From Camelus dromedarius (taxonomy: Eukaryota): 64,000 nucleotides of DNA. The position numbers and the translations under genes are program-made. The notes beneath the pieces were generated by a model. The model saw only the letters and a program-made list of their open reading frames with translations, did no database searches and had not been told where the DNA came from. This document shows, piece after piece, positions 7,901-63,756 of the stretch (its first letter is position 1; each line of letters begins with the position of its first letter). Location: NCBI RefSeq assembly GCF_036321535.1, contig NC_087447.1, positions 372,001 through 436,000 on the forward strand, read 5' to 3'.

Positions 7901-10900
7901 AAGGAGCACCCAGAAGGCACCCACTGGCCTTCAGCAAAGGGTCCCCAACCAGCGAGCTTGCACGGCTCAACACCAGCGGGTTCCAGGCATCCCTGCTCCC
8001 CTCACCACAGCCCAGGGTGGACCCCACACTAGGTGGCCGGGAGCTTAGGGTCCCTGTCAGCAAGAAGAGGGATGGGCGAGGCCAGACCGCGGGGCCCGTG
8101 TGAACATAGCAGCATTTCAATACTTAACCTAGAAGATGAAAGTCAAAACTCAGGACAGCTTAAGGCTTTTGTTTACTTGATCGGGCTGGAAGAACAAATC
8201 TGAGGTCACACCAGCTTGTTCTGGGTGTTTGAACAACATGGGTTTCAGGAAGACACTGCTGGTTTTATGCAGCCAGGCCAGCCATCCGAAGGCAGTGGGA
8301 GTCCAGTCCCAAGTCTAGAAAGTTCTCCAGGTGTTTTAAATGGGCTATGAGGGTCCAGTCATTTGCAGGTGAGATGGTAAAGGTAGTTTTTAAGCATCCT
8401 CGCTTGATTTTCCTTATTTATACTGCTGTTTATCAAATAATAAGCTTCAAAAAGAATTTAATAAAACCTGGAAAACCTGGAAATGGAAGAGGCTATGTGG
8501 CCCCAGCGGGAGGCGCAGAGTGGGGCAGGGATGAGGCAGGCGACACCGGCTCCCAGGGAACCCCGCATCCTGCAAGTAATCTGGCACTCGGAACCGGCTT
8601 TAGTACGTGATTCAGCAATATTCTGACAGATATCAGTGCTTTATTTAATTGAACAGAGACAAAAAATCATGTTTGTTTCGTTATGAAGGCTTACAAATTA
8701 GCTCAAAGAATAATAAAAATATACAGAAAGATCATAAAACAAGGATGAAAACTACAGAGAGGAGCGGAAGGCTTTATAAAGGTAACATGACGCACCGTCC
8801 ATGACAAAACAAAATGTTTAATTCCAAGAAGACAGAAAGAAACCCAATTCCAAGAAAAAATTAGATCAGAAATTGTATGAAAAGGTATTCTGTTCCTTGA
8901 AAACAACAGTGAAACATATAAGGAGTGTTTAAATTTTCTGTTATTGAATCCTGAAACTTGGCCAAACGATGGTTGCAGATCTCCAGGGACTGAAAGTGAA
9001 TAAATATTTGTAAAAGGAACCTGATTAAACATGATTAAATATGACAGTTCAATAAAGTCACATTACAGCTTAGGTGATGACAATGATACTGAAGACATTA
9101 AAATCTCAGGCAGTGTTATATGGGCTGGAACGTAATTTTAAGGTAATGGCTGTCAGTTCTTCAGAGTCTGGGAGAGAATTCAGCACCTGAAAGTGTCGCT
9201 GCCGTTAAGACTGTGTCCCACGTGAATGGGGCTGGTTCCCAGAGGGCTGCTCATCCATCCACTGGGAGAAAGGCACCGACGGCCCTGGTGTCCCCGCCAA
9301 GCCAGCCTTGGACCGGACAGCCTTGACTCAGGACAATCGTGTGGGGAAAACCACACTAACCATCTGGGAAACGCAACAGCTCATTTGGAAATTAACGTAC
9401 TTGAAGGGGCAGCTTTCACTACAGCACGGCCGTGCGCGTGTCCCCAGGTGCTGGTTTTCAGCTGGGTTCTATCCTCTCCCTGTTCATGCCTGGGAGTTCT
9501 TTGTAGAGCCGGGGTGCGTTTTAGACCCCATAGGCCTCTGCACCCCGCCTTCCCCCGCTAACTCTAACCAGGGTGCTTTTCACTAAAACAGTGATCCCTC
9601 GTTTGCACTGTTCCAGTCCATCCGTTCTGGCTGGTGCTTTGGGTGTTTTTTTAGGACGTTGGTCTACACCCCCAAGGTCTTGGAGATACTCTGCTTTTTC
9701 ATCTGTCTGCTTGTGGTCTCACTGTTTACTTTTGGGTCTTTAATCCAGCTTCTCTGTGAGGTTGCTGCCACACAGAGAACAGGTTGTGGTACCAGACTGA
9801 GGCCCCGTTGTGTTTTCCACTATGTGGTGAGGCGGTGTTCCCGACCTCCTCCACCGGCAGTCCACCGGCGTCCTCCGGGCCATTCTCCAGGCCCATGCGG
9901 GTACGCCTGCGTGTTCCCCGCTCTCCGTCTGCAGCCTGCACTGGTGCAGCTCTGCGCTAATGTGTGAGTATCTGACACCTCATCTTGGTTTTCCTTTTTC
10001 CACACTGACTCAGCTATTTCTGAGCACTTGCATTTGAGTTTTACAATCAGTTTTTTTTGGATTTCACACACCCTACTCCTTCTGGGATTTTTTTTTAATT
10101 AAAAAAGATTCATATGCTAATTTGGGTTAATTTTTAAGTTACATACATCCACAAATATGGTATAGCTCTCCATTCTGTGTTCTTTTATGTTTTGAATAGA
10201 GCCTTTAGACTCCCTCTGTAAGGTTCGTTATCAGAATGCTGTCAGCTGCAAGGCACAGAAGCCTGTGTCCAGCTGGCCCCAGCAGCAAGAGGTTATTCCT
10301 CCCTTTTGTGGGTACACACCTGGGCCAAGCCCATTCTAACCACGGAGGATACATCAGTGACCAGAACAGGTGAGAACCCCGTCTCCGGGACAGTCAAGGG
10401 CAAGTCCCCTCGCGTGCTCGGCATGGCTACAGCCATGTTGGCAGGCCAAGGAGTGTGTCAGTCCTCTAGAGTTGCTGAACAAAGCACCACGAGCCAAGCG
10501 GCTTGAACTGACTCTTCAGTTCTGGAGGCCGCAAGGCAGGATCTGGGGTCGGAAGCGCCGGTTCCCTCTGAGGCTGAGGGAGGTCCTGTTTCATTCCCCT
10601 CTCCTTGGGCGGTGCTGGCCACGTTTGGGGTTCCTTGCCTGGCAGACTCATCACCCCAGGCTCTGCCTCCACACTCATGTGACCTTCTCCCCATGTCCAA
10701 ATTCTCTGTTTATAAGCTCACCAGTCGTACTGGGTGGTGTGACTGCATCTCACATAATTACGTCTGCAGAGGCTAAATTAACTCCCATCTGTTTGTAGTA
10801 TCTCTGTAATCACGGATGGAGCTCTGTCTCTGTTGTGTTTTCCGGTTGAGTATTGCCAATGAAGAGAAGCATTCTGTTGGTTTAGAATAGATGTGTTAAA

Positions 10901-31693: not shown

Positions 31694-31803
31694 CGGTCGC
31701 GCTGCCCAGGGACAGATCAGCCGCTGTCACACGCACAGTGGGTCCGGAGCAGCGCAATGTGCAGTGGGCAGTGGCTGCCCTGCGCCTGGAGGGACCGCCG
31801 GCA
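31694..31803 (-). ncRNA. MIR210: pre-miR-210 hairpin; mature 3p at 31717-31738, 5p at 31755-31776
   Basis: Minus strand contains CTGTGCGTGTGACAGCGGCTGA, identical to miR-210-3p as I recall it, paired with 5p AGCCACTGCCCACTGCACATTG in a 110-nt stem-loop. Syntenic position. Confidence 0.97.
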
Positions 31804-35925: not shown

Positions 35926-36369
35926 ACGGACGGCGCGAAGCCGCTGGTCCCGAGAGCGCCACCACAGCGGCCAGGCCGGACTGTAGGCGGCTCGCGCTCT
36001 GGGTCTGGCGGATGGAGAGGTGGGCGGCGGCGATGGGGGCGGGTCACCGAGTGGGGGCGGGGCCCGGGCTGTAGGCGGGACCCTAGGTGTGCAAGACGGC
36101 CGCTCCCATTCGCTCCGGGCGGCCGGCGAGGGTCGGACTATGCCATCTTCCTGACGGGGGAGGACAGCCCGGCACAGCCCCCTAGCGGGGGCTTAGATAC
36201 CTAAAGTTCTCCCAGGAAACTGGTCCCCTTGGAAAATGCTAACGCTCTAAACTGTATTTCCAAGTCTTGAGATCCCCGACTGCAGGGAGTGGCTCCTTCC
36301 TCCACCTCAGGCCCTTTTTCCCCGCCCGGGTCCCAGTGGTTTCTGCCAACGGGAGGGGCGGGAGGGCCC

Positions 36370-36529
36370 CGGAAGCCGGCTCCATGCACTTCCGGGTCGA
36401 GGAGCGCGCGGCGGCGGCGGCGGCGGCAGCGGCGGCGGAGGCGGCGGCGGCGGCCGGGCCTAGTCGTGGCTCTCGCTCGGGCGGCGGCGGCGAGCGTCCA
36501 GGAGCGGCCAGCGGGGCTCGAGGTTCCGG
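36370..36529 (+). other. PHRF1: PHRF1 exon 1 (nominally non-coding, contains GCG repeat)
   Basis: Donor CGG|GTATGT at 36529/36530. TSS approximate. Confidence 0.7.
36408..36455 (+). repeat. Interrupted trinucleotide repeat (GCG)6 GCA (GCG)3 GAG (GCG)4 GCC
   Basis: Read directly from the sequence. Confidence 0.95.
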
Positions 36530-36934
36530 GTATGTACGAGGGCTGCGGCCTCCCGGGGTCCCTGCCGCTCCCCGTCCGGAGCGCCGGCCCGGGCGCCGCG
36601 CGCTTTGTCTGCGGCCTGCTCGGCGGTGCGAGGCCTGCGCCGCGCTGGCCCCGGGCGGGCGGCAGCAGCAAGGTGCCCGGGCGGGCGCGGGGGACCTCGC
36701 GCAGAGGCTGGGAGTCCCCGAGCCTGCAGGCGGGTTTCGGGGGTGGCCGCCTTCCTGTTCCTGGTCGTGGGCATCTCGCCGCCTGGTCCTGTGACACCCG
36801 CCTCTGCGCTGTCGCTTTCCCCGCGCTGAGCGTGACCCTTTGCCAACTCGTTTCCGGCTCCTGGTCGTCATGCTTTTATCGGCTTCGTCTGTGTTTTGAC
36901 AGGCCCTTGTGGTTTACAGGGTGGTTTCCCGTTC

Positions 36935-37100
36935 CTTAACTCACGTAGTCTTCACAGCAGTCTCTCGGGAGTAGGTATTGGCCTTCCTGTTTTACAGCTA
37001 AATAGATTGGAGCCCAGAGAGGTTAAGTAACTTGCCAACGTCACACAGCTACTGAGCGCAGAGCCAGGGCACTGTGTTAACCCAAGCCTTGATTCCTGGT
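36935..37100. mobile_element. MIR SINE
   Basis: Core gcccagagaggttaagtaacttgccaacgtcacacagcta. Confidence 0.85.
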
Positions 37101-37101
37101 C

Positions 37102-37123
37102 CTTTTTTTTTTTTTTTTTTTTT
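37102..37123. repeat. Poly-T tract (about 22 nt)
   Basis: Read directly from the sequence. Confidence 0.9.
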
Positions 37124-40104
37124 AACGAGACTTGTAGCACTGTCAACGTTGGAGTTTATATATTCTTGTTTCTTCAGCATCAGAGTAGTAGTCGGCCTGG
37201 TGAGCCACATTTTGGCCAGTGGTTGGCTGGACAGAACCTGAAGCTGAAGTGAGATTTGACCTGGGACTTGGCACACCTTCCCTCTCCCTGGACCACTCGG
37301 CATTTTTTCTTACGGGAAGAATGTTGAGTCAGAATGACAGCAGCTGGTTCTTTCTTTGCACCTGGCTGGTGGCGAGGCCCTGGCTGGGCCAGCCTGGCTT
37401 TCGTTTTCTCAGCAGCCCTCCAGCATGGACTCCTGGTGTCCATCCCAGCCCTGCAAAGACATTTATGGCCCTAGCTTATTGACTTCCGCTGCAGATTACA
37501 GTTTTGAGGTCTTGTAGCCTCTGTGGAGACGATGAATGAAAAATGACAGTGGGCCTGGTGTGAGGTGTGGGACCAGGCAGGCTTATTCAGGGCCTGGCAG
37601 TGGGCACTCAGGTTGTGGTCCTGGCACAGTTGCCAGTCACCACACCAGGAACCTTTTGGTTCCTTAGCAATGGCTGGAATTGCAGGTGTTTTGGGTGTTG
37701 GAATTTGGAAAGAGAAATAACTCTTTCTGGCATAAAATTTCCCTCTAACTCCCCCAAATCGGGAGGCGGAGCGGGAAAACCACAGAGCACTGCCAGCGCT
37801 GACAAAGGTGGCCAGCAACCGAGAAGGGCAATGGGCTTTACTGACCATTGGTTTGGAACATCTGAGCAGAGGTGGCAGGCATGTCTGAGCTGGGGCTGCT
37901 GGTGGGGCCAAGAGGTCCTAAGTGGGGGTCCCCATTAACACTTGCTCTGACGAGAAAGGGGGTGCTGGGGGTTGCTCACTGTGGTTTCCTCCTCAGTATT
38001 TGTACAAGTGCTTGCTCTGGAAGGTACCTTTGGAGGCCCCCGGGCGCCGACAGAAGTTACTCTTGTGTGACTACACGGGAAGGGATGCTGCTCCCCCCAC
38101 ATGACTGAAGCTTGCCTGCTGCCTGGGGGAGGGTGTGAGGAGGCCTTTGGAGATTTTCTCACCATCTATGATGGGGGTGTACATGGCTCTCGGGACTAGA
38201 CCCCCCAGCTGTGGGGACACGGGGAGTTGAGCCTCATTCCTGAGCTGTATTTCTGGCAAGCCCAGTGTGCCAGAGCCAGCGGGCCTCACTGACCTCTGCT
38301 GGCAGTGCTGTGATGCAGGCCCTGCCTCTCACTGCCCCTCACAGGCAGACCTAGGTCTCAGTCACCCAGGAAGAAGCTGGGGCTGTTTGTACTTTTGACC
38401 TTGTGTGTGTGAACTGTCCCTAGCAGGTTACGTGTTCTGAAGTTTTCCCTGTTAGCTTCATGGGTGTGAGCACTTATCTCCCTCAGTAGGTTGTGTTTCT
38501 CCAGGGCAGGAACCATGCTGCACACCAGTAGGGGCAGAGCGGGTGTTAGAGCAGGTGTCCCAGAATGACGCTGTCAAGTCCAGTCACAGCTGCAGCCAGA
38601 GGGTGACAGGTCCTCTTACATGCAGTGGTGCTGCAGCCATTGTGCTCACGGGAAAGGCGTCATCCTCCTAGACAGATGGTGGCACCATCATGTCCATTAG
38701 TCTGTGTTTCTCTAGCAGGAGTTGTGGCCAGGACGCAGGTGTGGGGCAGGTAGGGCCCCTGCTGTGTCGCTGATCCGTCAGGTGTTGGGGGTGCAGACCC
38801 TTAGCGGGTCTGTGGGCTGACTGTGGTGGATTTTCTTAATCTTAGGGTACTAGGAAGAAGAAAAGTGGGAGCTTTAGGAGGTCAGTAATTCCACAAAACC
38901 TCCTTAGTTTACTTTTTCCAGATAGAAGTTGCCCTCACCATTTAGAAAACATCTTCCTAGAATCCAGGCTTTGTATGGGAAGCGAGGCCCTCTGGGGTCT
39001 GAATCTGGCCTCAGCACCACCAGGAGACTGTCCTTTGGGGGAACCTGTACAATCTCTGCTGATTGCCAGGTGCACGGGAAGCGTGTATGGCCCACGGGAG
39101 AGGAGCCTGCCTGTGGAATGAGCCTTTCCTGGTTTCTGGGCACACCACTGTCAGCTCAGCCCCCTACCCCTGGTTCTTGCTTTGCCCCTCTGCCTTCTGG
39201 TCTCTCCTGTGACCCCTTTCCTTTGACCACGGAGACCAGACTTGGTCGGAAGCACACTCTGACAAGGAGAGGCGTTTCTTCCCTGTGTTGTTGTTGAGAA
39301 GGGTTTCCTCTCAGGGTCACCTGGAAAGTGAGGTGAGCAGCACTGATGGGAAAGGAACCCTGATTAGGAGACCAAAGTTGGAGGCCCTGGTGTGGGAGGG
39401 TGTTTGTGTCTCACTACAGTCTACATCTGTGAGGGCATTTGTCCAGGTTCTCTGCGTTGTCCTTGCAGTGGCCTTGCGGCACAGACAGGACAAGTGTCCC
39501 CACTTGGAGATCAGGAGCCTAGGAGCAGGTGCACACGGCAGCTGAGAGCCAGACCTCTGCTCACCGTGGGCCTGTGCGGCTCCTGGGCAGTCAGGTGACT
39601 CTTCCATGCCCCGTGGACACTGGGGCGAGGTCGGGGGGCCTCCCAGCGGTAGTCAGGTGCACGAAGGCTGGCTGACTGGCCTTGGCTGAGGGGGGTGTGC
39701 TAGGGGATGCGGGGAGAGGGCTCTGCTGGTCACCTGGGACCTTCTGATGACCCCCTCTGTTGAGGTCCTGCTTTGCCTCAGCTCGTGATAGGCCGTTTCA
39801 CTGGCGCCTGGCAAGGGGGTACCCAGGGAGAGTTGAGGTGTGGCAGGTGCCTGATTGAGCAAGAATGCCGCCAGTCTGAGGCTAAATTAGCTTCGTTGTA
39901 AGTTGAGATCTGGCTCTGAATGTGGCTCTGTCGATAGGAGCCGTCTGCATGTGTCCATGTACAGTTCTGTGTGCACTATGTCTCCCTGTCCTGGGGTGGA
40001 TGCATGTCACCAGGCATGCCGTGTGTACAGAGTGACTGTCGCCTGGGACGGTGCAGAATGATTTGACTCTGGTTTCTTTCAGAGCTGAACTCCAATGTCC
40101 AGCA

Positions 40105-40198
40105 ATGGATGACGACAGCCTGGACGAACTTGTTGGCCGAAGCCGAGGGCCAGATGGACACCGGAGACTCAGTCCTGCTGGCCCGGCCAGTGATGCTG
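40105..40198 (+). CDS. PHRF1: PHRF1 coding exon 1 (acceptor 40082)
   Basis: [31 protein letters not shown]|GTGAGC. Confidence 0.93.
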
Positions 40199-46100: not shown

Positions 46101-49100
46101 AGGACCGCCTGCTCCTGTGTGACGGCTGTGACGCCGGGTAAGCCTGCGGCCCATGTCCCGTCAGCTCGCGAGTTCCTGAGCCAGCCTCCAAGGCCCCGTC
46201 CTTAAAGCAGCCTGCTCCAGGGTGTCCTGGGGCTGCACCACTGTGCTCAGTGACACGAAGTCCCCCAGAGGGGACAGCGGGGCCCTGGCACCCAGTGGTG
46301 TGCCCTTCAGCCCTCCGCACAGTGGCCGCAGTATGCTGCTTTGATTACTGCCACCTGTGCCCTCCCCGTCCCCGGATAATACCCTGAGATCATCTACAGA
46401 GATGCAACTAATACCTCAAGTGAGAAAGAAAAGGGGGCACATGAGAAGGGGCGGTGTGGGCGGGACCATGGGGGAACCACCCTTTCTTCGAGGCCAGGGC
46501 TCCAGGTGAAGCTTCCAGCCAGTGACACCCATGCACCCTGGGCCCTGGCGGCAGGGAGACTTTCACTCTCATCTCTCGACACTGGTCGGTCCCTGCTTCT
46601 AGTCAGACCCTCTCCTTGCCCTGGAGGTGGGGCACCTGTGGAGTGCTTGCATGTCCCAGTGTGGATGGTCAGCCCCACCAGGGCCCCCCAACCTCCCCTC
46701 TCCCCCTCCACCTCTCTCAACCTCCCCACACCTCTCGGCACCTCCCCACAACCCTGCACTGCCTTGCAGCCGCACACTCAGTCTCTGGCTCACACTCGTC
46801 TTCCTGTGGCAGCAGGCCAGCCTCCCCAGCATCTTGGCAGCATCTCCCACCTTCCTCCCCAGCTCCACCCCTGGGCTCACACATCGGAGATGAGGGTCTT
46901 CCTCGTTCCTCCGGAGTCTCAGATGGTACCCACCCTTTATGACAATTTCCTGAATGCTCGACCTCGGTGATCTTGCCTCTTGCGACTCCCAGAAGGTGGC
47001 CGTGTCTGAGTGGTGGTCCACAGCACGTTGTCACCCTGGGTCTGGACGGCAGAAATGGTGCCTTGGGTGTCCCGCAGGCTGTGCAGGCGCTGCACTGCTG
47101 TGGCATCACACTCCGTGCCCGGGTGGGGACACAGGGCTCCTGTATGGCTGCACCCCAAGCTCTGCTCCCACACAAATGCACCTTTTCTCCTGGAGCTGCG
47201 ACAGCTCGGGGCCTGTGAAGGAAGGGCTGGGAATAGCTGGACGCTGCCCAAGAGGCCACACATGGTGGGAAAGTGAGACCAGGCCCTGGCTGCCGCACCC
47301 TTCACCTGGCTGGCCCCCGCCACCGGCCTGCCTGCTCTGCCCGGCTTACCCATGCTGGACAACGAGCCCAGTGCCTGGTGGCCACGTGGACGAGGCTGAT
47401 GGAACTTCCGCTCACAAAGCGCTGCTCTCCCCAAGCTTCTGAATGGAGCCCGCGGTTGTTCTTTTTATTTTTTAAGTAGGTTTTATTTTTTAGAGCAATT
47501 TTAGGTTCATAACAAAATTGAGTGGAACAGAACGTGGTTTTTTTTTTAGTTGAGGTCCAGTTGGTTTACAATTCTGCTTTCAGATGTGCAACACAGGGAT
47601 TCAAACTTCTTGTGGGTCGTACGCCACTGAACGTTACAGACTGTCAGCTCCATTTCCCTCTGCTGCACAGCACACCTGTGTGTCTTTGTTTATAGAGTGC
47701 TTTGTACCTCTTCATCCCTCACCCTGGCCCCTCCCCCGCCGAGCTGGTAACCACTGGTTTCTTTTCTGTCAGTGAGTCTGTGGGTGTTTTTTTATACCTT
47801 CCGTTTGTTTTATTTTTTTAGATTCTGCATGTAAGTGATAACATAAAGTATTTGTTTTTCTTTTCTGACATTTCATTTAGCATAATACCTTCCAGGCCCA
47901 TCCATGTTTTTGGAAATGGCAGAATTTCATTCTTTTTTTATGGCTGAGTAGTAGTCCTCTGTGTGTATGTGTGTGTTTGTGTAAAATCACATCTTTATCC
48001 ACTTGATCAACTTGTCTGTTGATGGGCACTTTGTGTTGCTTCCGTATCTTGGTAATTGTAAGTAATGCTGCCGTGAACATTTGAGGTGCACGTACCTTTT
48101 CAAATTAGTGTTTCATTTTCTTTGGTTAAATACCCAGAAGTGGACTTGCTGGATTATGTGGCAGCTCTGTTCTTAATTTTTTGAGGATTCCCCCTGCCAT
48201 TTTCCACAGCGGCCGCACCAGCTTACATTCCCAGTGCCGGATCCCCTCCCTCGCTTGTTGTCTGTTTTATATACATTAACCCCAAACTCCTAACTTATCC
48301 CTCCACCCCTTTCTCCTTTGGTAACCGTAAGTTTGTTTTCTATGTCTGAGAGACTATTTCTGTTTTGTAAATGAGTTCATTTGTACCTTTTTTTTTTTTT
48401 TTAAGATTCCATATATAAGTAATATGTGATATTATTAGTCTTTCAGTGTCTGACTTACTTCACTTAGTATGATAACCTCTGGGCCCCCTCCATGTTGCTG
48501 CAAATGGCATTATTTTATTGTTTTTTGTGGCTGAGTAGTATTCTACTATATAAATATACCACATCTTTTTTATCCCAGTCATCAGTCGTGGACATTTAGG
48601 TTGCCTCCATGTATTGGCTATTGTAAATAGTTCTGCTATGAACATTGGGGTGCATGTGTCTTTTCAAATTAGAGTTTCCTCCAGGTATATACCTAGGAGT
48701 GGGATTGCTGGATCCTATGGTAAGTCTATTTCTAGTCTTTTGAGGAATCTCCATACTGTTCTCCATAATGGCTACACCAAACTGCACTCCCACCAACCTC
48801 GTAGGAGGATTCCCTTTTCTCCACAGGCTCTCCAGCATTTGTCATTTGTGGACNNNNNNNNNNNNNNNNNNNNNNNNNNNNNNNNNNNNNNNNNNNNNNN
48901 NNNNNNNNNNNNNNNNNNNNNNNNNNNNNNNNNNNNNNNNNNNNNNNNNNNNNNNNNNNNNNNNNNNNNNNNNNNNNNNNNNNNNNNNNNNNNNNNNNGG
49001 TCTTCTGCCCATTTTTTGATTGAGTTTTTGTGTTTCGTTTTGTTTTGTTTTTTTTGAGTTGTATGAGTTGTTTGTGCATTGTGGAAATTAAGCCCTTGTC

Positions 49101-58100: not shown

Positions 58101-61100
58101 CACCCCAACACAGAGCCGCCGCGGGGTCCTGGTTCAGTGTTGCCTCTTGAGTGCTGCCACGTGGGACCGTGCTTAGCCCACCCTGCCAGGTGCTGTGGAG
58201 AGGGCTGGGGTGTCTCCCTGGGCCTCAGGGTGCAGGCTCACCCATTCCCTTTGGCCTCTGTCCTCCGTCCAGCAGTGAAGAGGTGCCTGCAACCCCTGCT
58301 TCCCCTCTGAGTGCCAAGAGGAGGGTTCTGTCCCAGTCAGCCCTGCGCTCTCACCAGCCTGTGGCCAGGCCTGTCTCCATGGGGCTCTCCAGGTGTGTCT
58401 TGTGGGGACAGGATGGCCGGGGGTGGCGGTGCCAAGGTAGGGCCACCGGCCAATGAGGACCATCTGGTCTCCGTATTGGTAACCTTTGTGGCCTCTTCCG
58501 TGGCTCCTGGATGAGGAGGTGCTGCAACCCGTCCCTAGCCAAGGGCACGGGGATGAAGGGGAGGCCGTGGCCCCCAGAGGCTGCCTCCACATCCCACCTC
58601 TGCCTCAGAGCCCACCAGCAGGGCTGGTAGGGAGTCAAGCTTCTCTTCTATTTAATTCTCAAAAAAGGAACCAGCAAAACCAGTAGAGCTGTTGCTCACC
58701 AGCTTCTGCTGGTGGCGTCCCGTGGGGGAAAGCATCAGATCATCCATCCCCAGACACCCTCTACCCTTTCGTCAGAGCTGCTGGCTGGGGCCCACTCCTT
58801 CCCTTGGGGGCCCCTGCCTGCTGCCAGGCTGGGTCTGGGGTGCAGAGGCGCTGATGGCAGGGCCTGCCCCGGGTCTGCCCTGCAGGAGGAGCGCTCCTGC
58901 CCCGGTGCCCCAGCCAGAAGTCCACGAGGACGCCGTGCCTGACCTGCTGGGCAGCATCCTGTCAGGCCAGAGCCTCCTGATGATGAACAGCGCCGACATC
59001 ATCATCCACCGGGACGGTTCCCTCAGCGCCAAGAGGGCAGGTGAGGCAGCTCTGCCAGCGCCGACCCCCAACCCCGAGTCTGCGACCCACAGGTTCCAGT
59101 TGTGGGCAAGGGTGCTGAGCTTCTGAAGATGCGTTTCCGTCACTGAGTTTCCGAGCTGATGACGTACAGATGGATGGAGTTTCCCTGCAGCCCGCAGGCC
59201 CTCCTGCCGTCACACAGCTGCCTCGAACCTCACGGCCACGGGAGCCAGCCCTGGGCCTCTGCACAAGTCGGCATTGGCGGGTTTCAGGGCGGCCTGGCTG
59301 TGCAGGCACGGTCGGTGATAGGCCAGGGTGCTGCCCCTTTTCAAGTGTGCATTACAGGCTCAGGCCATTTTTGATCCAAATAGCGTAAAAGTAGCAGATG
59401 AAGCAGAAGAGAACAGTGGGCAGCACCACAGGGGCCTCAGGCCCTGCCGGAGGGCAGCCAGGCAGCACTGAGTAGAAGGGATTTAAAGTGCATGGTTTCA
59501 GAGAAAGGCACTCTGGCAAAGGTTGAACTTTTTAAAGACGTGGATGGGAACTGATGGCTGTTTGGCTTTTTGTCTTTATAGCTCCAGTTTCTTTTCAGAG
59601 AAACTCAGTTGGTCCACCTGGAGAGGGAGAAGACACCGGGTCTGGGCCCTGTCTGCAGCCCAGAGTGACTCACTCAGGAAGCAAGCCACAGAGCTTAGGG
59701 TCCAGGTGTCCGGGCAAGGCCACCCCAGGCACACCCCCGGCTTCACCTGGCCCTGCCTGTGTTCCTGCGCCTGCATCGGGGGCCCCTGTGAGACTAGAGT
59801 CCTTGGTGACCCCTCAGGCGGGCCAGGCCCAGAACTTGTCCAGCGTGAGCAGACCCGGCTTAAAACAGAGTGACGACTCACGATTGAACGGCGACGCCAG
59901 GCGCTCTATGCCTCTGAGATCAGTGTCGTCGAAGGCCTCGGGTGGTCGCTCTGACTCGCCCCCTGGAAGCATGGTGCCAGCACAGGCCCCGAGACCCGCT
60001 CCCAGGAGAGCTGACATCGCCAGGCTGCCCAGGATACCAAAGATCAGGAGAGATGAGAGCTGCGGCCGGCGGGAGGACAAGGTCCCCACGGGCGGGCAGC
60101 ATGTCGACATCCCCAGCTCCTGCATCAGCCGGCTCACGGGCCGGGAGGGCCCCGGGCAGCCCAGCTGCGGTGCCCGGGTGGAGGGCGAGCCCAGCAGCAG
60201 GGGCACGCAGGAGCCCAGCACACCTTCCGGGGGTGGCCCCCAGCCCCCCGCTCTGCCTGGCCCCTCCAGGGGGAAGGGTGTCGGCTCGACCTTTGAGAGC
60301 TTCAGGATCAATATTCCTGGGAACACAGCCCACTCCAGCAGACTCCCCAGCCCTGGCTTCTGTAACACCTTCCGGCCTGTGGATAGCAAGGCGCAGAGGA
60401 GAGAGAGCCCCTCGCCCCTCTTCGCCGTCAGGAAGACGAAGCAGCTCAAGAGCGAGATCTACGATCCTTTCAACCCCACGGGCTCCGACTCCAGCTCCGC
60501 CGGCAGCAGCCCCGAGCGCCTGGGCTCCAGCCTCCTTCCCTCTGAGATCACCCGGACCATTTCGGTGGACAGTCCGAGGGCCCCAGCTCGGCCGCCCGTG
60601 CGTTGCGTCACCTCCTACACAGTGCAGACTGGCTTTGGGAAGGAGCCCCAGCCCCCCCAGGGGCCCTCTGGGCAGCCTGAGCTCCAGGACAAGGAGGAGC
60701 CCACTGAGGGCCAAGGCGCTGCCACACAGGTGCAGGGGGCGTCCCCGCCCGAGCCCTGGGGGGACGAGGACCGGCCACCCCGCAGCTCCTTCTTTGGCTC
60801 TGAGGGGCGGACAGTGACCTGTGTGACTGTGGCGGAGCCGGACGTGCCACCCAGCCCCAACGCCTTGCACACAACCACCCACAGGGTCGTGGAGCTGCGG
60901 TCCCCCACCCGCTCCCGCTCCACGTCCAGCTCCCGCAGCAGGAAGAAAACCCAGAGGCAGCAGGCCGCCAGCAGGGAGCATGGGAGGGCCCGCTCCGGTT
61001 CCCGTTCGTCCCACTCTGGGGACAGGAGCTCTCGGTCGGCATCGCCACCAGCAGGTGAGGACCCGGCTAAGAGGCACCGACCCAAGGTCCGGAGCCGGAG

Positions 61101-63756
61101 GTCTTCCAGTGACCGCTCCAGCAGCCATGAGCGAGCCAAGCGGAAGAAGGCCAAGGACAAGAGCCGAGAGAGGAGGAGGGGCACCTGGGGCCGAGGCCGG
61201 CGCAGGTCCCGCTCCGGCAGCCCCGGCAGCTCCTCCTACGAGCACCGCGAAGGCAGGAGGAAGAAGAGGCGGAGGTCCGGGTCCAGGTCTCGGGGGAGGG
61301 AGTGCTCGCCCCCCAGCAGCCTGGAGAGGTCCCGTAGGCCCAGGCACCCCAGGGAAAGGAGGGACCGGCCCCGAGAGAGGCGTGGCTCCCGGGAGAGGAG
61401 GAAGCGCAGGTCCAGGTCACCGAGCCTGGAGCACAGGTCCCGGGAGCACCGGCGGCCTCGTTCCCGTGAGAAGCACCCACGGCCCCGCCCCCGCTCCCCG
61501 GAGAGGAAGCTGGCCCCGAAAGAGGCTTCTCCGGTGCCCCCTGTCCCAGAGGAGCCCAGGCCAGACAGGGAGCACTTGGCCAGGCCCCCGGCCTCAGCAG
61601 GAGCAGACGCCTTGCCGGAGGGGGTCGAGACGGACAAGGGCCCCCCAAAGGCCGCCCCAGTCCCAGAGGCGCCAGCCGAGTGTCCACTCGAGGACCTGGA
61701 TTACGGCGACTCTGTCGAGGCGGGCCACCTCTTTGAGGACTTTTCAAGTGAAGCCATCTTCATGCAGCTTGATGACATGAGCTCTCCGCCCTCCCCTGAG
61801 AGCACGGACTCCTCCCCAGAGCGAGGCCTCCTGCCCAAGCCTGCTGTGCCTCCAACCAGCCAGCAGCATGACGCCAGCCTGGCCATGGCCACGGCCGCCA
61901 TCAGGAGGGAGGTGTCGCTGATCCACAGTGAAGATGCCACACAGCTCCTGCCCCAGACAGAAGGCCCCCAAGAGAAGCACTTGCTCCCGCAGGACATGGC
62001 TGAGGCCACCACAGTGCCCAGCACCCTGGGTGGCCAGGCCGTGGGTGGGGCGCCCGTGGTGAAGGAGGAAGGTCCTTCTCAGAACCCCTTGCTACGGGCT
62101 AAGGCTCTGGTGAAGAGAGTCACCTGGAACCTCCAGGAGGCAGAGAGCAGTGCCCCAGCCGAGGACAGAGGCCTGCGTGAGTAGGCACTTCCCAGGGTGG
62201 GGGGTTGGCGTGTGGTCTTCTCCCTGGGTGGCTCACGGGCCTCCTTCACACAGAGGGATGGCTGCGGCCTGACCAGTGGTCCTTGCTGCTGGGATGCTTT
62301 TCTGGAACTTTCTAGCCAGGAAGCAGCCTTCTGGCCTGGGGTGGCCACAGAACACTCACCCCTGCTGTTTTGGCCCTCAGGGATGCCGCTCCACAGACCA
62401 CAGAAGCCCCGGGAAGGGGTCCGGGAAACCGAGGACGTGGGCCCCATGGCTGCGTTCCAGCAGGCACCTTTCTCTGAGTCCCTTCCCCCTGGTTACGTGC
62501 TTCCGGACTCTGGCTTTCCCGATGCCAACCCCTCTCAGGTGGGCGCCTAGACTGGAGGGACGTGGCCTCGTGCCCAGGCCATGCTGGCTGGGCCAGGTCG
62601 GGGCTGAAGACCTCATAGTGCCACCCCCTTTCTGCCATGGCTCTGACTGGGGAGTAGGGTGGCGAGCGCGGTGCCGGGAGCTCTACAGAGGCTGAGTGGG
62701 ATTTGTTCTTGCCCAGGTATATGGCCCTAACCTGCCTCCCGCCCTGGCTCTGCCTCTGAGCATCCCGCCCTACGCACCTGTCAGCCAGCCCATGGTCCAG
62801 TTCATCCTGCAGGGGAGCCTTCCCCTGGAGGGCTGTGGGGTGGCTCAGAGCCCAGCCCCTGTACCCGCCATCCTGACCACAGCCTCAGAGCCACCTGGCC
62901 ACGCGGCCGCCACTGCCACCACCACTGCCAACAACTCTGAGGAGAGGACAGCTGCTCCCAGGCCAGCCTCAGAGAAGGCCAAGAACGAGGAGGTGAGTCC
63001 TGCCCCCCTCCCTCCAGGGGCAGGATGATGGGAAGCCTTGTGCCTCTGGCCAGAGGGCCCTCTAGGCCTCTAGGTGGGTGTCACATGCATGTTCTCACTC
63101 CCAGTACATGAAGAAGCTGCACGTGCAGGAACGGGCCGTGGAGGAGGTGAAGCTGGCCATCAAACCCTTCTACCAGAAGAGGGAGGTGACAAAGGACGAG
63201 TACAAGGACATCCTTCGCAAGGCCGTGCAGAAGGTGGGCTTGGCAGTCGCCACCTGGGGGGCCGAGACCCTGCCTGCTGACACTCTCGGGGGTCCGTGAG
63301 CATGGAGAAGGGTGCCCCAGGCCAGCCCGTCTCCCTGTAGCCGCACCGCATAGGCGGTCATGGGGGCTCACGGCAGTGGTCTCATGACTTGTTAAATAGA
63401 CCGAGTAGCATGAGGTGTGGGAAAGCAAGACTCCGAGAGATGACCCGTTCTCCAGCCCAGGGTGGGGTTCGTGGTCATGATGTGCTGGCCCGGCTCTATG
63501 GAACCCTCAGGCTGCCCATTGTCCCTCACGTGGTCCCCAGGGCCCAGTCACTGTGGTCACTGAACATGTGGGGTGTGAAAGGACATCTGTGTAACTGGCC
63601 CCCCCCCCCCAGATCTGCCATAGCAAGAGCGGGGAGATCAACCCGGTGAAGGTGGGCAACCTGGTGAAGGCCTACGTGGACAAGTACCGGCGCATGCGCA
63701 GACACCGGAGGGCCGAGGCCAGCGAGGAGCCGCCTGCCCCGGGCCCCGAGGGCTAA
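40105..63756 (+). CDS. PHRF1: PHD and RING finger domain-containing protein 1 (E3 ligase, RS-rich, C-terminal CTD-binding SRI-like domain), 17 coding exons, 1632 aa
   Basis: Exons 40105-40198, 40535-40630, 42627-42841, 44580-44663, 46019-46137, 52269-52366, 52611-52786, 53361-53490, 56569-56696, 57722-57903, 58273-58392, 58886-59040, 59582-62176, 62381-62538, 62717-62992, 63105-63233, 63613-63756 (4899 nt, all phases consistent). RING CPICLN...[24 protein letters not shown]; PHD CEVC...[15 protein letters not shown]...WFCPEC; C-terminus [23 protein letters not shown]...YVDKY. Confidence 0.96.
40535..40630 (+). CDS. PHRF1: PHRF1 coding exon 2
   Basis: tctAG|(E)[31 protein letters not shown]|GTGAGA. 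Confidence 0.88.
42627..42841 (+). CDS. PHRF1: PHRF1 coding exon 3 (RING)
   Basis: SEGSEEDG...[42 protein letters not shown]|GTGAGC. Confidence 0.95.
43338..43385. repeat. (TTTTG/TTTG)n simple repeat
   Basis: Read directly from the sequence. Confidence 0.8.
43440..43920 (+). mobile_element. Old L1M ORF2 (RT region) fragment
   Basis: gtcaacattgtatcggaa...gattggaaaagg...ttatttgcacgtaat resembles the RT LFADD region; includes (GGGAACAA)3 at 43816-43839. Confidence 0.55.
44580..44663 (+). CDS. PHRF1: PHRF1 coding exon 4
   Basis: tacAG|[28 protein letters not shown]|GTGAGT. Confidence 0.95.
46019..46137 (+). CDS. PHRF1: PHRF1 coding exon 5 (PHD N-half)
   Basis: [40 protein letters not shown]|GTAAGC. 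Confidence 0.95.
47460..48240 (-). mobile_element. L1 3' end(s), intermediate age
   Basis: Antisense L1 3'UTR/ORF2 end: tttagcataataccttccaggcccatccatgt...atggctgagtagtag...ttttcaaattagtg. Confidence 0.85.
48265..49570 (-). mobile_element. Younger 5'-truncated L1 (ORF2 C-terminus plus 3'UTR), spanning the N gap
   Basis: Minus-strand peptides [26 protein letters not shown] and [15 protein letters not shown] are typical L1 ORF2. Confidence 0.92.
48854..48998. other. Assembly gap (145 N)
   Basis: Run of N. Confidence 1.
51955..52205. mobile_element. MLT1A/B-type LTR fragment
   Basis: ttaatcgcccttcaaaggtcccatttccaagtgcagtcacatgggggtagggctccaacacgtgggtttggggggacacagtcca. Confidence 0.75.
52269..52366 (+). 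CDS. PHRF1: PHRF1 coding exon 6 (PHD C-half)
   Basis: [32 protein letters not shown]|GTAATG. Confidence 0.95.
52611..52786 (+). CDS. PHRF1: PHRF1 coding exon 7
   Basis: (D)[25 protein letters not shown]...RISTARGVQ|GTAGGT. Confidence 0.94.
53361..53490 (+). CDS. PHRF1: PHRF1 coding exon 8
   Basis: [43 protein letters not shown]|GTACAT. Confidence 0.94.
53860..55060 (-). mobile_element. Very old L1/HAL1 ORF1-region fragments
   Basis: T-rich degenerate antisense L1-like text; boundaries vague. Confidence 0.35.
56170..56460 (-). mobile_element. Old L1ME 3'UTR fragment
   Basis: T-rich L1 3'-like text; weak. Confidence 0.3.
56569..56696 (+). CDS. PHRF1: PHRF1 coding exon 9 (basic, NLS-like)
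   Basis: [42 protein letters not shown]|GTAGCA. Confidence 0.92.
57722..57903 (+). CDS. PHRF1: PHRF1 coding exon 10
   Basis: [18 protein letters not shown]...[27 protein letters not shown]|GTGACT. Confidence 0.92.
58273..58392 (+). CDS. PHRF1: PHRF1 coding exon 11 (NAGNAG acceptor)
   Basis: [40 protein letters not shown]|GTGTGT. Confidence 0.92.
58886..59040 (+). CDS. PHRF1: PHRF1 coding exon 12
   Basis: [51 protein letters not shown]|GTGAGG. Confidence 0.93.
59582..62176 (+). CDS. PHRF1: PHRF1 coding exon 13 (2595 nt, RS/RE-rich region)
   Basis: Within the 876-aa ORF; atAG|(A)PVSFQRNS...[17 protein letters not shown]...RSRSPS...[12 protein letters not shown]...DRGL-R|GTGAGT. Confidence 0.96.
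62381..62538 (+). CDS. PHRF1: PHRF1 coding exon 14
   Basis: [12 protein letters not shown]...[21 protein letters not shown]|GTGGGC. Confidence 0.9.
62717..62992 (+). CDS. PHRF1: PHRF1 coding exon 15
   Basis: [13 protein letters not shown]...[11 protein letters not shown]...SEKAKNEE|GTGAGT. Confidence 0.92.
63105..63233 (+). CDS. PHRF1: PHRF1 coding exon 16
   Basis: [43 protein letters not shown]|GTGGGC. Confidence 0.95.
63613..63756 (+). CDS. PHRF1: PHRF1 last coding exon
   Basis: C12-AG|[33 protein letters not shown]...PEG* with TAA at 63754-63756. Confidence 0.95.

What the first reader, a model, noticed from the sequence alone, without database searches (positions are those of the whole stretch)
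36384..40107. Hidden in-frame polyalanine N-terminal extension of PHRF1 across the exon 1-2 junction
ATG 36384 in exon 1 reads MHFRVEER-A10-E-A5-GPSRGSRSGGGGERPGAASGARGS, then GG|A across the 36529 to 40083 splice, then AELQCPA, running with no stop directly into the annotated ATG 40105 (MDDDSL). That is a 56-aa extension exactly in frame (146 nt + 22 nt = 168 nt). The upstream ATG has weak context (TCCATGC), so leaky scanning would give long and short proteoforms. Initiating there would also bypass the uORF that overlaps the main ATG. The Ala tract is encoded by the GCG repeat, so repeat length would tune the protein directly, as in polyalanine transcription factors and 5'UTR-CGG uORF genes such as NOTCH2NLC. 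I know of no annotated PHRF1 isoform like this. It depends on the TSS lying upstream of 36384, which the sequence alone cannot show.
Basis: partly seen in the sequence, partly recalled or inferred. Interest (0 to 1): 0.75.

Follow-up and report, generated by a model that had tools for sequence, protein, structure and literature searches.

The report
Unconserved upstream start in PHRF1 leader
The upstream in-frame ATG and its alanine-rich 56-residue extension of camel PHRF1 are really in the sequence, but gene-finding software already lists this isoform and related mammals keep neither the ATG nor the reading frame, so it looks like an ordinary GC-rich promoter and leader, not a hidden protein part.

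Summary
ATG 36384, the GT donor at 36530, the AG acceptor at 40081-82 and the 22-nt exon-2 leader give an open 168-nt frame, a 56-residue extension, into the main ATG at 40105.

It is not hidden. The window is a camel (Camelus). RefSeq model XP_032346234.1 (PHRF1 isoform X6, Camelus ferus, 1702 aa; the UniRef entry covers 4 Camelus sequences) has exactly this N-terminus. Homologous extensions are modelled in minke and blue whale, and in older marmoset releases; a later marmoset version lacks it.

- Dog, elephant and one unidentified mammal have GTG at the site.
- A pig-like mRNA has no ATG and an in-frame stop.
- Musk deer and deer mouse keep the ATG but are out of frame.
- Substitutions show no third-position bias and are mostly non-synonymous.
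- The exon is no better conserved than the flanking promoter and intron.
- 66% of dinucleotide shuffles stay open.

The ATG lies between two ETS-type promoter motifs that are invariant in 8 of 8 genomic sequences, inside a CpG island.

Verdict: an ordinary, already annotated, lineage-specific upstream ATG in poor context, which gives at most a minor proteoform.

The parts
36321..36364 (+). Promoter-proximal GC boxes (CCCGCCC at 36321, GGGGCGGG at 36355) and a CCAAC/CCAAT-like element at 36345-36352
   Evidence: Motif positions. The block aligns across 8 mammalian genomic sequences. It lies in a CpG island with GC 0.72-0.80 and CpG o/e 0.9-1.0.
36369..36379 (+). ETS-type site CCGGAAGCCGG, GGAA core on the + strand
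   Evidence: The core CCGGAAG is kept in 7 of 8 genomic sequences; the whale-like one has CAGGAAG.
36384..36386 (+). Upstream ATG in weak context (T at -3, C at +4)
   Evidence: ATG in camel, whale-like L007, L001, Moschus, Peromyscus and marmoset. GTG in dog, elephant and L003. Absent in the pig-like mRNA L010.
36387..36398 (-). ETS-type site (C/T)ACTTCCGGGTC, GGAA core on the - strand. It also holds an initiator-like TGCACT with its A at 36388.
   Evidence: ACTTCCGGGTC is invariant in all 8 genomic sequences aligned. Initiator-like match. The functional role is inferred.
36408..36454 (+). GCG trinucleotide repeat, read as Ala10-Glu-Ala5 in the frame of ATG 36384
   Evidence: Tandem Repeats Finder, period 3, 15.7 copies. 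Its length differs widely between species.
36384..36529 (+). Exon 1 part of the possible extension (146 nt); the rest of exon 1 is 5' leader
   Evidence: Identical to the first 48 residues of RefSeq model P0172.
36530..40082 (+). Intron 1 (3553 nt), GTATGT donor and polypyrimidine-AG acceptor.
   Evidence: The junction is implied by the exact match of the spliced translation to P0172. The same exon 1 to exon 2 junction is seen in an RNA contig of a pig-like species (L010).
40083..40104 (+). Exon 2 leader, 22 nt, open in the main frame (AELQCPA)
   Evidence: It is 22 nt and open in camel, dog, elephant, Peromyscus, Moschus and the pig-like mRNA. It is 21 nt with an in-frame TGA in an old macaque assembly.
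40095..40112 (+). Six-codon uORF (MSSNG*) overlapping the main ATG
   Evidence: The uORF ATG is present in 7 of 7 mammals with DNA in hand, and the stop is kept in 6 of 7.
40105..40198 (+). Main PHRF1 start codon (strong context ccagcaATGg) and the coding part of exon 2
   Evidence: Most of the 120 listed PHRF1 proteins begin at this methionine (at least 71 by motif, and nearly all of the rest on reading), against about 18 with extra residues in front of it.

Best explanation
This is the CpG-island promoter and GC-rich 5' leader of camel PHRF1. By lineage-specific accident it carries an ATG in poor Kozak context in frame with the main start. The frame stays open because 80% G+C sequence and a GCG repeat hold almost no stop codons. 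The sequence around the ATG is conserved because it is a pair of ETS-type promoter motifs, not because it codes for protein. Shown: the ORF, its existing annotation, and the lack of ATG, frame and codon conservation. Inferred: most ribosomes, if the ATG is on the mRNA at all, scan past it to the conserved uORF and the strong main ATG, so the 1702-aa form is at most a minor, unselected proteoform.
For: The ORF is real but not unusual: 66% of dinucleotide shuffles stay open and two of three frames of exon 1 are open. It is already modelled: P0172 = XP_032346234.1, Camelus ferus X6, 1702 aa, first 87 residues identical to the window's spliced translation. The codon at the site and the length to the donor (which must be 2 mod 3) vary across species. 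Camel has ATG/146, whale-like L007 ATG/176 and L001 ATG/134, all in frame. Moschus has ATG/121 and Peromyscus ATG/126, both out of frame. Dog has GTG/121, elephant GTG/115 and L003 GTG/123. With the 22-nt leader, the same ATG gives an extension in camel, an ORF of at least 79 codons overlapping the main start out of frame in Moschus, and a 43-codon uORF in Peromyscus. A pig-like spliced mRNA contig has no ATG and an in-frame TGA. Substitutions against camel fall evenly on codon positions, for example 6/8/6 and 3/5/6, and changed codons are mostly non-synonymous: 13 of 16 against L001, 12 of 13 against Moschus, 7 of 12 against the whale-like sequence. Exon identity (0.77-0.90) resembles that of the 60 nt upstream (0.59-0.89) and the first 130 nt of the intron (0.67-0.85). 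ACTTCCGGGTC next to the ATG is invariant in 8 of 8 sequences, even where ATG is GTG. ATG versus GTG after a C is a CpG transition, so recurrent gain or loss is cheap (inference). NCBI replaced the extended marmoset model XP_035119792.2 (1675 aa) with version .3 (1624 aa).
Against: Four lineages (camel, baleen whale, marmoset and the ruminant-like L001) do keep ATG and frame. In a fifth (L003) a different ATG 2 nt upstream restores an in-frame open reading. That is somewhat more than the one in three expected, though GCG-repeat indels are multiples of three by nature. Gnomon chose this CDS for one camel transcript model, which may reflect RNA-seq cover over the ATG. RNA-Seq runs hold 42-50% of the sampled words of 36150-36700. 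If all those words are exonic, a TSS upstream of the ATG would follow. No ribosome profiling, CAGE or MS data could be consulted.
Confidence: 0.75

Rival explanations
1. A real but minor lineage-specific proteoform. In camels, and independently or ancestrally in baleen whales and marmoset, a share of PHRF1 mRNAs start upstream of 36384. A small share of ribosomes initiate at the weak ATG, producing a 1702-aa PHRF1 with an Ala-rich N-terminal tail, which is neutral or has a small lineage-specific effect.
For: Open in-frame ORF. Gnomon model X6 in Camelus, and X1/X2 in minke whale. ATG and frame kept in 4 lineages. RNA-Seq runs hold 42-50% of the sampled words of 36150-36700. A pig-like mRNA contig extends 405 nt upstream of the exon-1 donor, so long leaders occur at this gene.
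Against: Weakest possible context (T at -3, C at +4). The ATG sits inside the core-promoter motif cluster, where TSSs usually lie at or just downstream (general knowledge of ETS/SP1 CpG-island promoters, not tested here). Gnomon may extend an ORF that is open at the 5' end of a transcript model up to the next ATG, so the model may not prove the ATG is transcribed (own knowledge). No coding signature.
Confidence: 0.2
2. One reading: a conserved, functional polyalanine N-terminal extension whose GCG-repeat length tunes PHRF1, comparable with polyalanine transcription factors or translated 5'UTR repeat ORFs such as NOTCH2NLC.
For: Only the sequence-level possibility and the presence of a GCG repeat.
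Against: ATG absent in dog, elephant, L003 and the pig-like species. Frame broken in Moschus and Peromyscus. No third-position bias, and mostly non-synonymous change. Repeat length ranges from near zero (Moschus, elephant) to long and interrupted (whale) with no constraint visible. Most of the 120 listed PHRF1 proteins (at least 71 by motif, nearly all the rest on reading) start at MDDDS or a near variant. No paper links PHRF1 with an N-terminal extension or CGG repeat, and the single papers that mention it beside uORF or polyalanine do so only in passing and were not read.
Confidence: 0.03

Closest known systems
RefSeq model XP_032346234.1, PHD and RING finger domain-containing protein 1 isoform X6 [Camelus ferus] (UniRef100_A0A8B8TVA9, 4 Camelus sequences)
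   Same: First 87 residues identical to the window's spliced translation from ATG 36384. Length is 1702 = 1646 + 56 aa.
   Different: Nothing at sequence level. It is a computational model without experimental support for the start codon.
PHRF1 isoforms X1/X2 of Balaenoptera acutorostrata (XP_057408090.1, XP_057408091.1), the B. musculus UniRef entry A0A8C0HY69, and Callithrix jacchus XP_035119792.2
   Same: Homologous extension starting MHFRVEER / MHFRVGDR, reading through the same exon 1 to exon 2 junction into (A/Q)LQC(P/A)AM.
   Different: Ala tract replaced by Ala/Val mixtures, and length 51-66 residues. The blue whale model has an extra insert. The marmoset extension is absent from accession version .3.
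Conserved N-terminal extensions from upstream in-frame starts (for example PTEN-L, or the conserved non-AUG extensions catalogued from mammalian alignments; own knowledge)
   Same: An in-frame upstream start, leaky scanning proposed, two proteoforms possible.
   Different: Those cases are defined by conservation of frame and by codon-level purifying selection. Here both were tested and not met.
Translated 5'UTR GGC/CGG-repeat ORFs (NOTCH2NLC uN2C polyG, FMR1 FMRpolyG; own knowledge)
   Same: A GC-rich trinucleotide repeat in the first exon, downstream of a possible start codon.
   Different: Here the repeat would be read as Ala, in frame with the main protein. No expansion, no translation evidence, and a short repeat (about 16 units).
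TATA-less CpG-island promoters driven by SP1 and ETS-family sites (own knowledge of the class)
   Same: GC 0.72-0.80 and CpG o/e about 1. GC boxes and an inverted pair of ETS cores within 45 nt, conserved across orders.
   Different: TSS positions were not mapped here, so the promoter role of these motifs is inferred.

Membership tests
Conserved N-terminally extended proteoform (selected upstream in-frame initiation) | Upstream start codon in frame with the main CDS, with no stop between | tested here: met
   168 nt open from ATG 36384 to ATG 40105 across the splice.
Conserved N-terminally extended proteoform (selected upstream in-frame initiation) | Start codon and reading frame preserved in related species | tested here: not met
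   In frame with ATG: camel, whale-like L007, L001, marmoset. ATG but out of frame: Moschus (121 nt), Peromyscus (126 nt). GTG: dog, elephant, L003. No ATG and an in-frame stop: pig-like mRNA.
Conserved N-terminally extended proteoform (selected upstream in-frame initiation) | Codon-level purifying selection (third-position bias, excess of synonymous change) | tested here: not met
   Substitutions by codon position are about even, and changed codons are mostly non-synonymous. Exon identity resembles flanking non-coding identity. Samples are small (12-19 changed codons per pair).
Conserved N-terminally extended proteoform (selected upstream in-frame initiation) | Start codon lies on the mRNA (TSS upstream) and ribosomes initiate there | not testable with these tools
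No CAGE run was listed. The word shares of RNA runs cannot separate exon from retained intron.
Polyalanine-tract regulatory proteins (PHOX2B, HOXD13, ARX type) | Ala tract inside the constitutively translated, conserved coding sequence | tested here: not met
   The tract lies upstream of the start used by most listed PHRF1 proteins. It is short or absent in Moschus, elephant, dog and L003.
Translated 5'UTR trinucleotide-repeat ORFs (NOTCH2NLC / FMR1 type) | GC-rich trinucleotide repeat in the leader, downstream of a usable start codon | tested here: met
   GCG repeat 36408-36454, 24 nt after ATG 36384.
Translated 5'UTR trinucleotide-repeat ORFs (NOTCH2NLC / FMR1 type) | Demonstrated translation of the repeat, and length polymorphism or expansion with an effect | not tested
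   No ribosome-profiling, MS or population data within reach. The UniRef entry groups 4 identical Camelus sequences, so no length difference is seen among those.
CpG-island SP1/ETS promoter | CpG island with conserved GC box and ETS cores next to the first exon | tested here: met
   GC 0.72-0.80, CpG o/e 0.91-1.01. ACTTCCGGGTC is invariant in 8 of 8, and CCGGAAG is kept in 7 of 8.
CpG-island SP1/ETS promoter | Mapped transcription start sites within or just downstream of the motif cluster | not testable with these tools
   No reads could be laid.
Conserved regulatory uORF overlapping the main start | uORF start codon kept across species at the same place | tested here: met
   ATG 10 nt before the main ATG in camel, dog, elephant, Peromyscus, Moschus, macaque and the pig-like mRNA. 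A 6-codon ORF ending in TGA in 6 of 7.

The most novel reading that the evidence does not exclude
In camelids, baleen whales and marmoset, a fraction of PHRF1 is made from the weak upstream ATG as an Ala-rich, N-terminally extended form. It bypasses the conserved start-overlapping uORF, so the ratio of long to short protein responds to TSS choice and to scanning stringency. The same ATG acts as a repressive overlapping ORF in musk deer and as a plain uORF in deer mouse, so one promoter-embedded ATG has been rewired three ways during mammalian evolution.
Probability: 0.12. Interest if true: 0.4.

Novelty: already known. Interest (0 to 1): 0.12.

Why it matters
It matters little for biology as it stands. 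It shows that an attractive 'hidden extension' in an 80% G+C first exon can be a by-product of composition plus a promoter motif, and that public gene models already hold it. The case is useful as a calibration. The better-conserved feature at this locus is the six-codon uORF overlapping the main ATG. It is the more promising target for anyone studying translational control of PHRF1.

Tried and rejected
**Reads**
There is therefore no direct evidence on the TSS or on splicing from reads.

**Run searches**
- A search for CAGE libraries listed none.

**Metagenome scans**
- Two scans found nothing: one with the conserved ETS-ATG block and one with the spliced exon 1 to exon 2 junction.

**Protein searches**
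- A search with residues 1-200 of the extended camel protein found N-terminal fragments from RNA contigs. None carried this extension: coverage stopped at 72%, which corresponds to the part from MDDDS onward. One fragment, P0230, carries a different short extension that reads through the exon-2 leader. This is weak negative evidence only.

**Locus look-ups**
- Look-ups for Bos indicus X3 and Vicugna pacos X8 failed, because only the longest product of a gene is on record. The nearest camelid relative therefore could not be compared.
- The macaque locus has exon 1 inside a run of N. I did not fill it.

**Papers**
- Searches for PHRF1 with 'N-terminal extension', 'CGG repeat', or 'ribosome profiling' plus 'extension' gave nothing.
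- 'uORF' and 'polyalanine' each gave one paper that holds PHRF1 only once or twice. I did not read them.

**Readings considered and rejected**
- That the RefSeq model proves the ATG is transcribed. As far as I know, Gnomon can extend an ORF that is open at its 5' end.
- That the 42-50% word share of RNA runs fixes the TSS near 36240-36280. Retained intron would give the same share.
Full report
**1. The observation**

- ATG 36384 sits in ggctccATGc, with T at -3 and C at +4.
- Exon 1 ends at 36529 before GTATGT.
- The acceptor AG is at 40081-82, and exon 2 begins at 40083.
- 22 nt later the main ATG at 40105 sits in a strong context (ccagcaATGg).
- 146 + 22 = 168 nt without a stop gives MHFRVEER-A10-E-A5-GPSRGSRSGGGGERPGAASGARGSGAELQCPA, followed by MDDDSL.
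- The next in-frame stop upstream is TAA 36240, with no other in-frame ATG in between.
- The short uORF (ATG 40095, MSSNG*, ending 40112) overlaps the main ATG.
- The Ala tract is a GCG repeat of 15.7 units at 36408-36454.
- The region is a CpG island: GC 0.72-0.80, CpG observed/expected 0.91-1.01.

**2. Is it more than chance?**

No.
- Two of the three frames of this part of exon 1 are completely open.
- 66% of dinucleotide-preserving shuffles of the 165 nt after the ATG have no in-frame stop.
- An ATG is in frame one time in three.
- Long open frames also run on the opposite strand through the same island, at 198 and 210 aa. This is the usual picture for such composition.

**3. What organism, and is the isoform unknown?**

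The large PHRF1 exon (59536-62181) is 99.5% identical in protein to Camelus bactrianus PHRF1 isoform X1. The window is therefore a camel.

In the 90% cluster of that protein there is a member of 1702 aa, which is 1646 + 56. It is XP_032346234.1, 'PHD and RING finger domain-containing protein 1 isoform X6 [Camelus ferus]'. Its UniRef100 entry stands for 4 Camelus sequences. Its first 87 residues equal the window's spliced translation letter for letter. The extension is therefore already in public gene models of this genus.

The homologous extension is also modelled elsewhere:
- Balaenoptera acutorostrata X1/X2: MHFRVEERAAAVVAVAVV...GSGAELQCAAMDDDS.
- A Balaenoptera musculus UniRef entry.
- Callithrix jacchus XP_035119792.2 and its siblings: MHFRVGDRLAAAEAAVV...SGAQLQCAAMDDNS.

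The marmoset accession in version .3 is 1624 aa instead of 1675, so the later model lacks the extension.

Most of the 120 best PHRF1 proteins listed start at the MDDDS methionine or a near variant of it (at least 71 by motif, and nearly all the rest on reading). About 18 have extra residues in front of it. Most of those extensions come from other, unrelated first exons. These read through the same exon-2 leader, which is why '...AELQCPAM' turns up in sloth, sperm whale, lemur and even bird and lizard models.

**4. Cross-species test of ATG and frame**

A protein search with the unspliced ORF over exon 1 found three ORFs called on host DNA in metagenome and Logan assemblies:
- L007 is whale-like. 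Its ORF nearly equals the minke whale N-terminus.
- L001 is ruminant-like. It shares ATGTACTTCCGGGTCAAGGAG with musk deer.
- L003 is unidentified.

NCBI loci with 10 kb of upstream flank gave exon 1 of dog, Asian elephant, Peromyscus leucopus and Moschus berezovskii. For an extension, the length from the site to the donor must be 2 mod 3, given the 22-nt leader found in every species except macaque. Results:

| Species | Codon at site | Length to donor (nt) | Outcome |
|---|---|---|---|
| Camel (window) | ATG | 146 | In frame |
| Whale-like L007 | ATG | 176 | In frame |
| L001 (ruminant-like) | ATG | 134 | In frame; leader not in the contig |
| Marmoset | ATG | protein only | In frame |
| Moschus | ATG | 121 | Out of frame; the ATG opens an ORF of at least 79 codons that runs over the main start |
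| Peromyscus | ATG | 126 | Out of frame; a 43-codon uORF ending at TGA in the leader |
| Dog | GTG | 121 | No ATG |
| Elephant | GTG | 115 | No ATG |
| L003 | GTG | 123 | No ATG at the site; an ATG 2 nt upstream reads another frame and, thanks to a 1-nt insertion near the donor, would also arrive in frame (125 nt) |

Two further cases:
- A spliced RNA contig of a pig-like species (L010) joins exon 1 directly to exon 2 at the homologous junction. It has no ATG and has a TGA in frame upstream of the homologous GSRSGGGG...[11 protein letters not shown] stretch.
- In an old macaque assembly exon 1 lies in a run of N, which I left alone. The leader there is 21 nt with an in-frame TGA.

So the same promoter-proximal ATG is an extension start in some lineages, an overlapping out-of-frame ORF in another, a plain uORF in another, and absent in several.

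**5. Coding signature**

Against camel, substitutions in ungapped codons fall evenly on the three codon positions: L001 6/8/6, whale-like 3/5/6, dog 5/8/9, Peromyscus 8/9/11. Changed codons are mostly non-synonymous: 13 of 16, 7 of 12, 11 of 15 and 16 of 19 respectively.

Identity to camel is similar in all three compartments:
- ATG to donor stretch: 0.77-0.90.
- 60 nt upstream: 0.59-0.89.
- First 130 nt or so of the intron: 0.67-0.85.

The samples are small, but nothing points to selection on a peptide.

**6. Why is the neighbourhood of the ATG conserved?**

The ATG lies between CCGGAAGCCGG (36369-36379) and CACTTCCGGGTC (36387-36398). This is an inverted pair of ETS-type cores, 15-30 nt after a GC box (36355). 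ACTTCCGGGTC is invariant in all 8 genomic sequences, including those with GTG in place of ATG.

After a C, ATG versus GTG is a CpG transition, the commonest mutation in mammals. Repeated gain or loss is therefore to be expected (inference).

Such SP1/ETS clusters are core-promoter elements of TATA-less CpG-island genes, with start sites usually within or shortly downstream of them (my own knowledge, not tested). TGCACT at 36385-36390 fits the initiator consensus with its A at 36388, four bases past the A of the ATG. This is a weak hint that part of the transcripts may not even contain the ATG.

**7. What could not be settled**

The TSS is unresolved.
- No CAGE run was listed.
- RNA-Seq runs from two studies hold 42-50% of the sampled words of 36150-36700. 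This would fit an exon 1 starting near 36240-36280, but it would fit a shorter exon plus retained intron equally well.
- The camel RefSeq model shows that Gnomon accepted this CDS for one transcript. As far as I know, Gnomon can extend an ORF that is open at the 5' end of a transcript model up to the next ATG, so this is not proof either.

**8. Verdict**

The feature is already annotated, it is not conserved, and it carries no coding signature.

The most likely account is an ordinary promoter and leader with an accidental weak in-frame ATG (0.75). A minor, unselected long proteoform in camels remains possible (0.2). A conserved functional polyalanine extension is very unlikely (0.03).

The better-conserved translational feature here is the six-codon uORF overlapping the main ATG. 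Its start codon is present in 7 of 7 mammals examined.

Noticed in passing
window 40095-40112: The six-codon uORF overlapping the main PHRF1 ATG (MSSNG*) has its ATG at the same place in camel, dog, elephant, Peromyscus, Moschus, macaque and a pig-like mRNA. Its TGA stop is kept in 6 of 7; elephant reads on for 32 codons. Bird and lizard PHRF1 models that read through the leader (DLQCPAM, NSKCPAM) suggest the leader is conserved across amniotes.
   Followed up: partly
window 31695-31790 (- strand): mir-210 precursor between RASSF7 and PHRF1 (Rfam RF00679, 81.5 bits, E 6.6e-20), as expected from synteny.
   Followed up: no
L008, L009, L011 (RNA contigs of a pig-like species): Alternative 5' leaders of PHRF1. 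Exon 1 is spliced to one or two extra non-coding exons before exon 2 (L008 with an in-frame stop, L009 open), and L011 has an unrelated upstream sequence joined at the exon-2 acceptor. The blue whale protein P0174 likewise has a 16-residue insert between the extension and AELQCAAM.
   Followed up: no
L016 (Macaca fascicularis, GCA_000230815.1) around 9979-10000: The exon-2 leader is 21 nt instead of 22, which puts a TGA in frame just before the main ATG. The region of exon 1 is an assembly gap (2564 N in the 10-kb flank), which I left unfilled. It could be a true 1-nt deletion in catarrhines or an error of an old assembly.
   Followed up: no
Protein cluster of P0053 (Callithrix jacchus): Accession XP_035119792 changed from 1675 aa (with the MHFRV extension, version .2) to 1624 aa (without it, version .3). 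The models of this start codon are therefore unstable between versions.
   Followed up: no
window 36201-36871 (- strand): ORFs of 198 and 210 aa run antisense through the CpG island. This is typical open-frame noise of 80% G+C sequence, and a reminder that openness alone means little here.
   Followed up: no
window 48854-48998: A run of 145 N inside the PHRF1 gene body. Left as it is.
   Followed up: no
The Rfam scan stopped at 36900, and every later search used other stretches.
   Followed up: no
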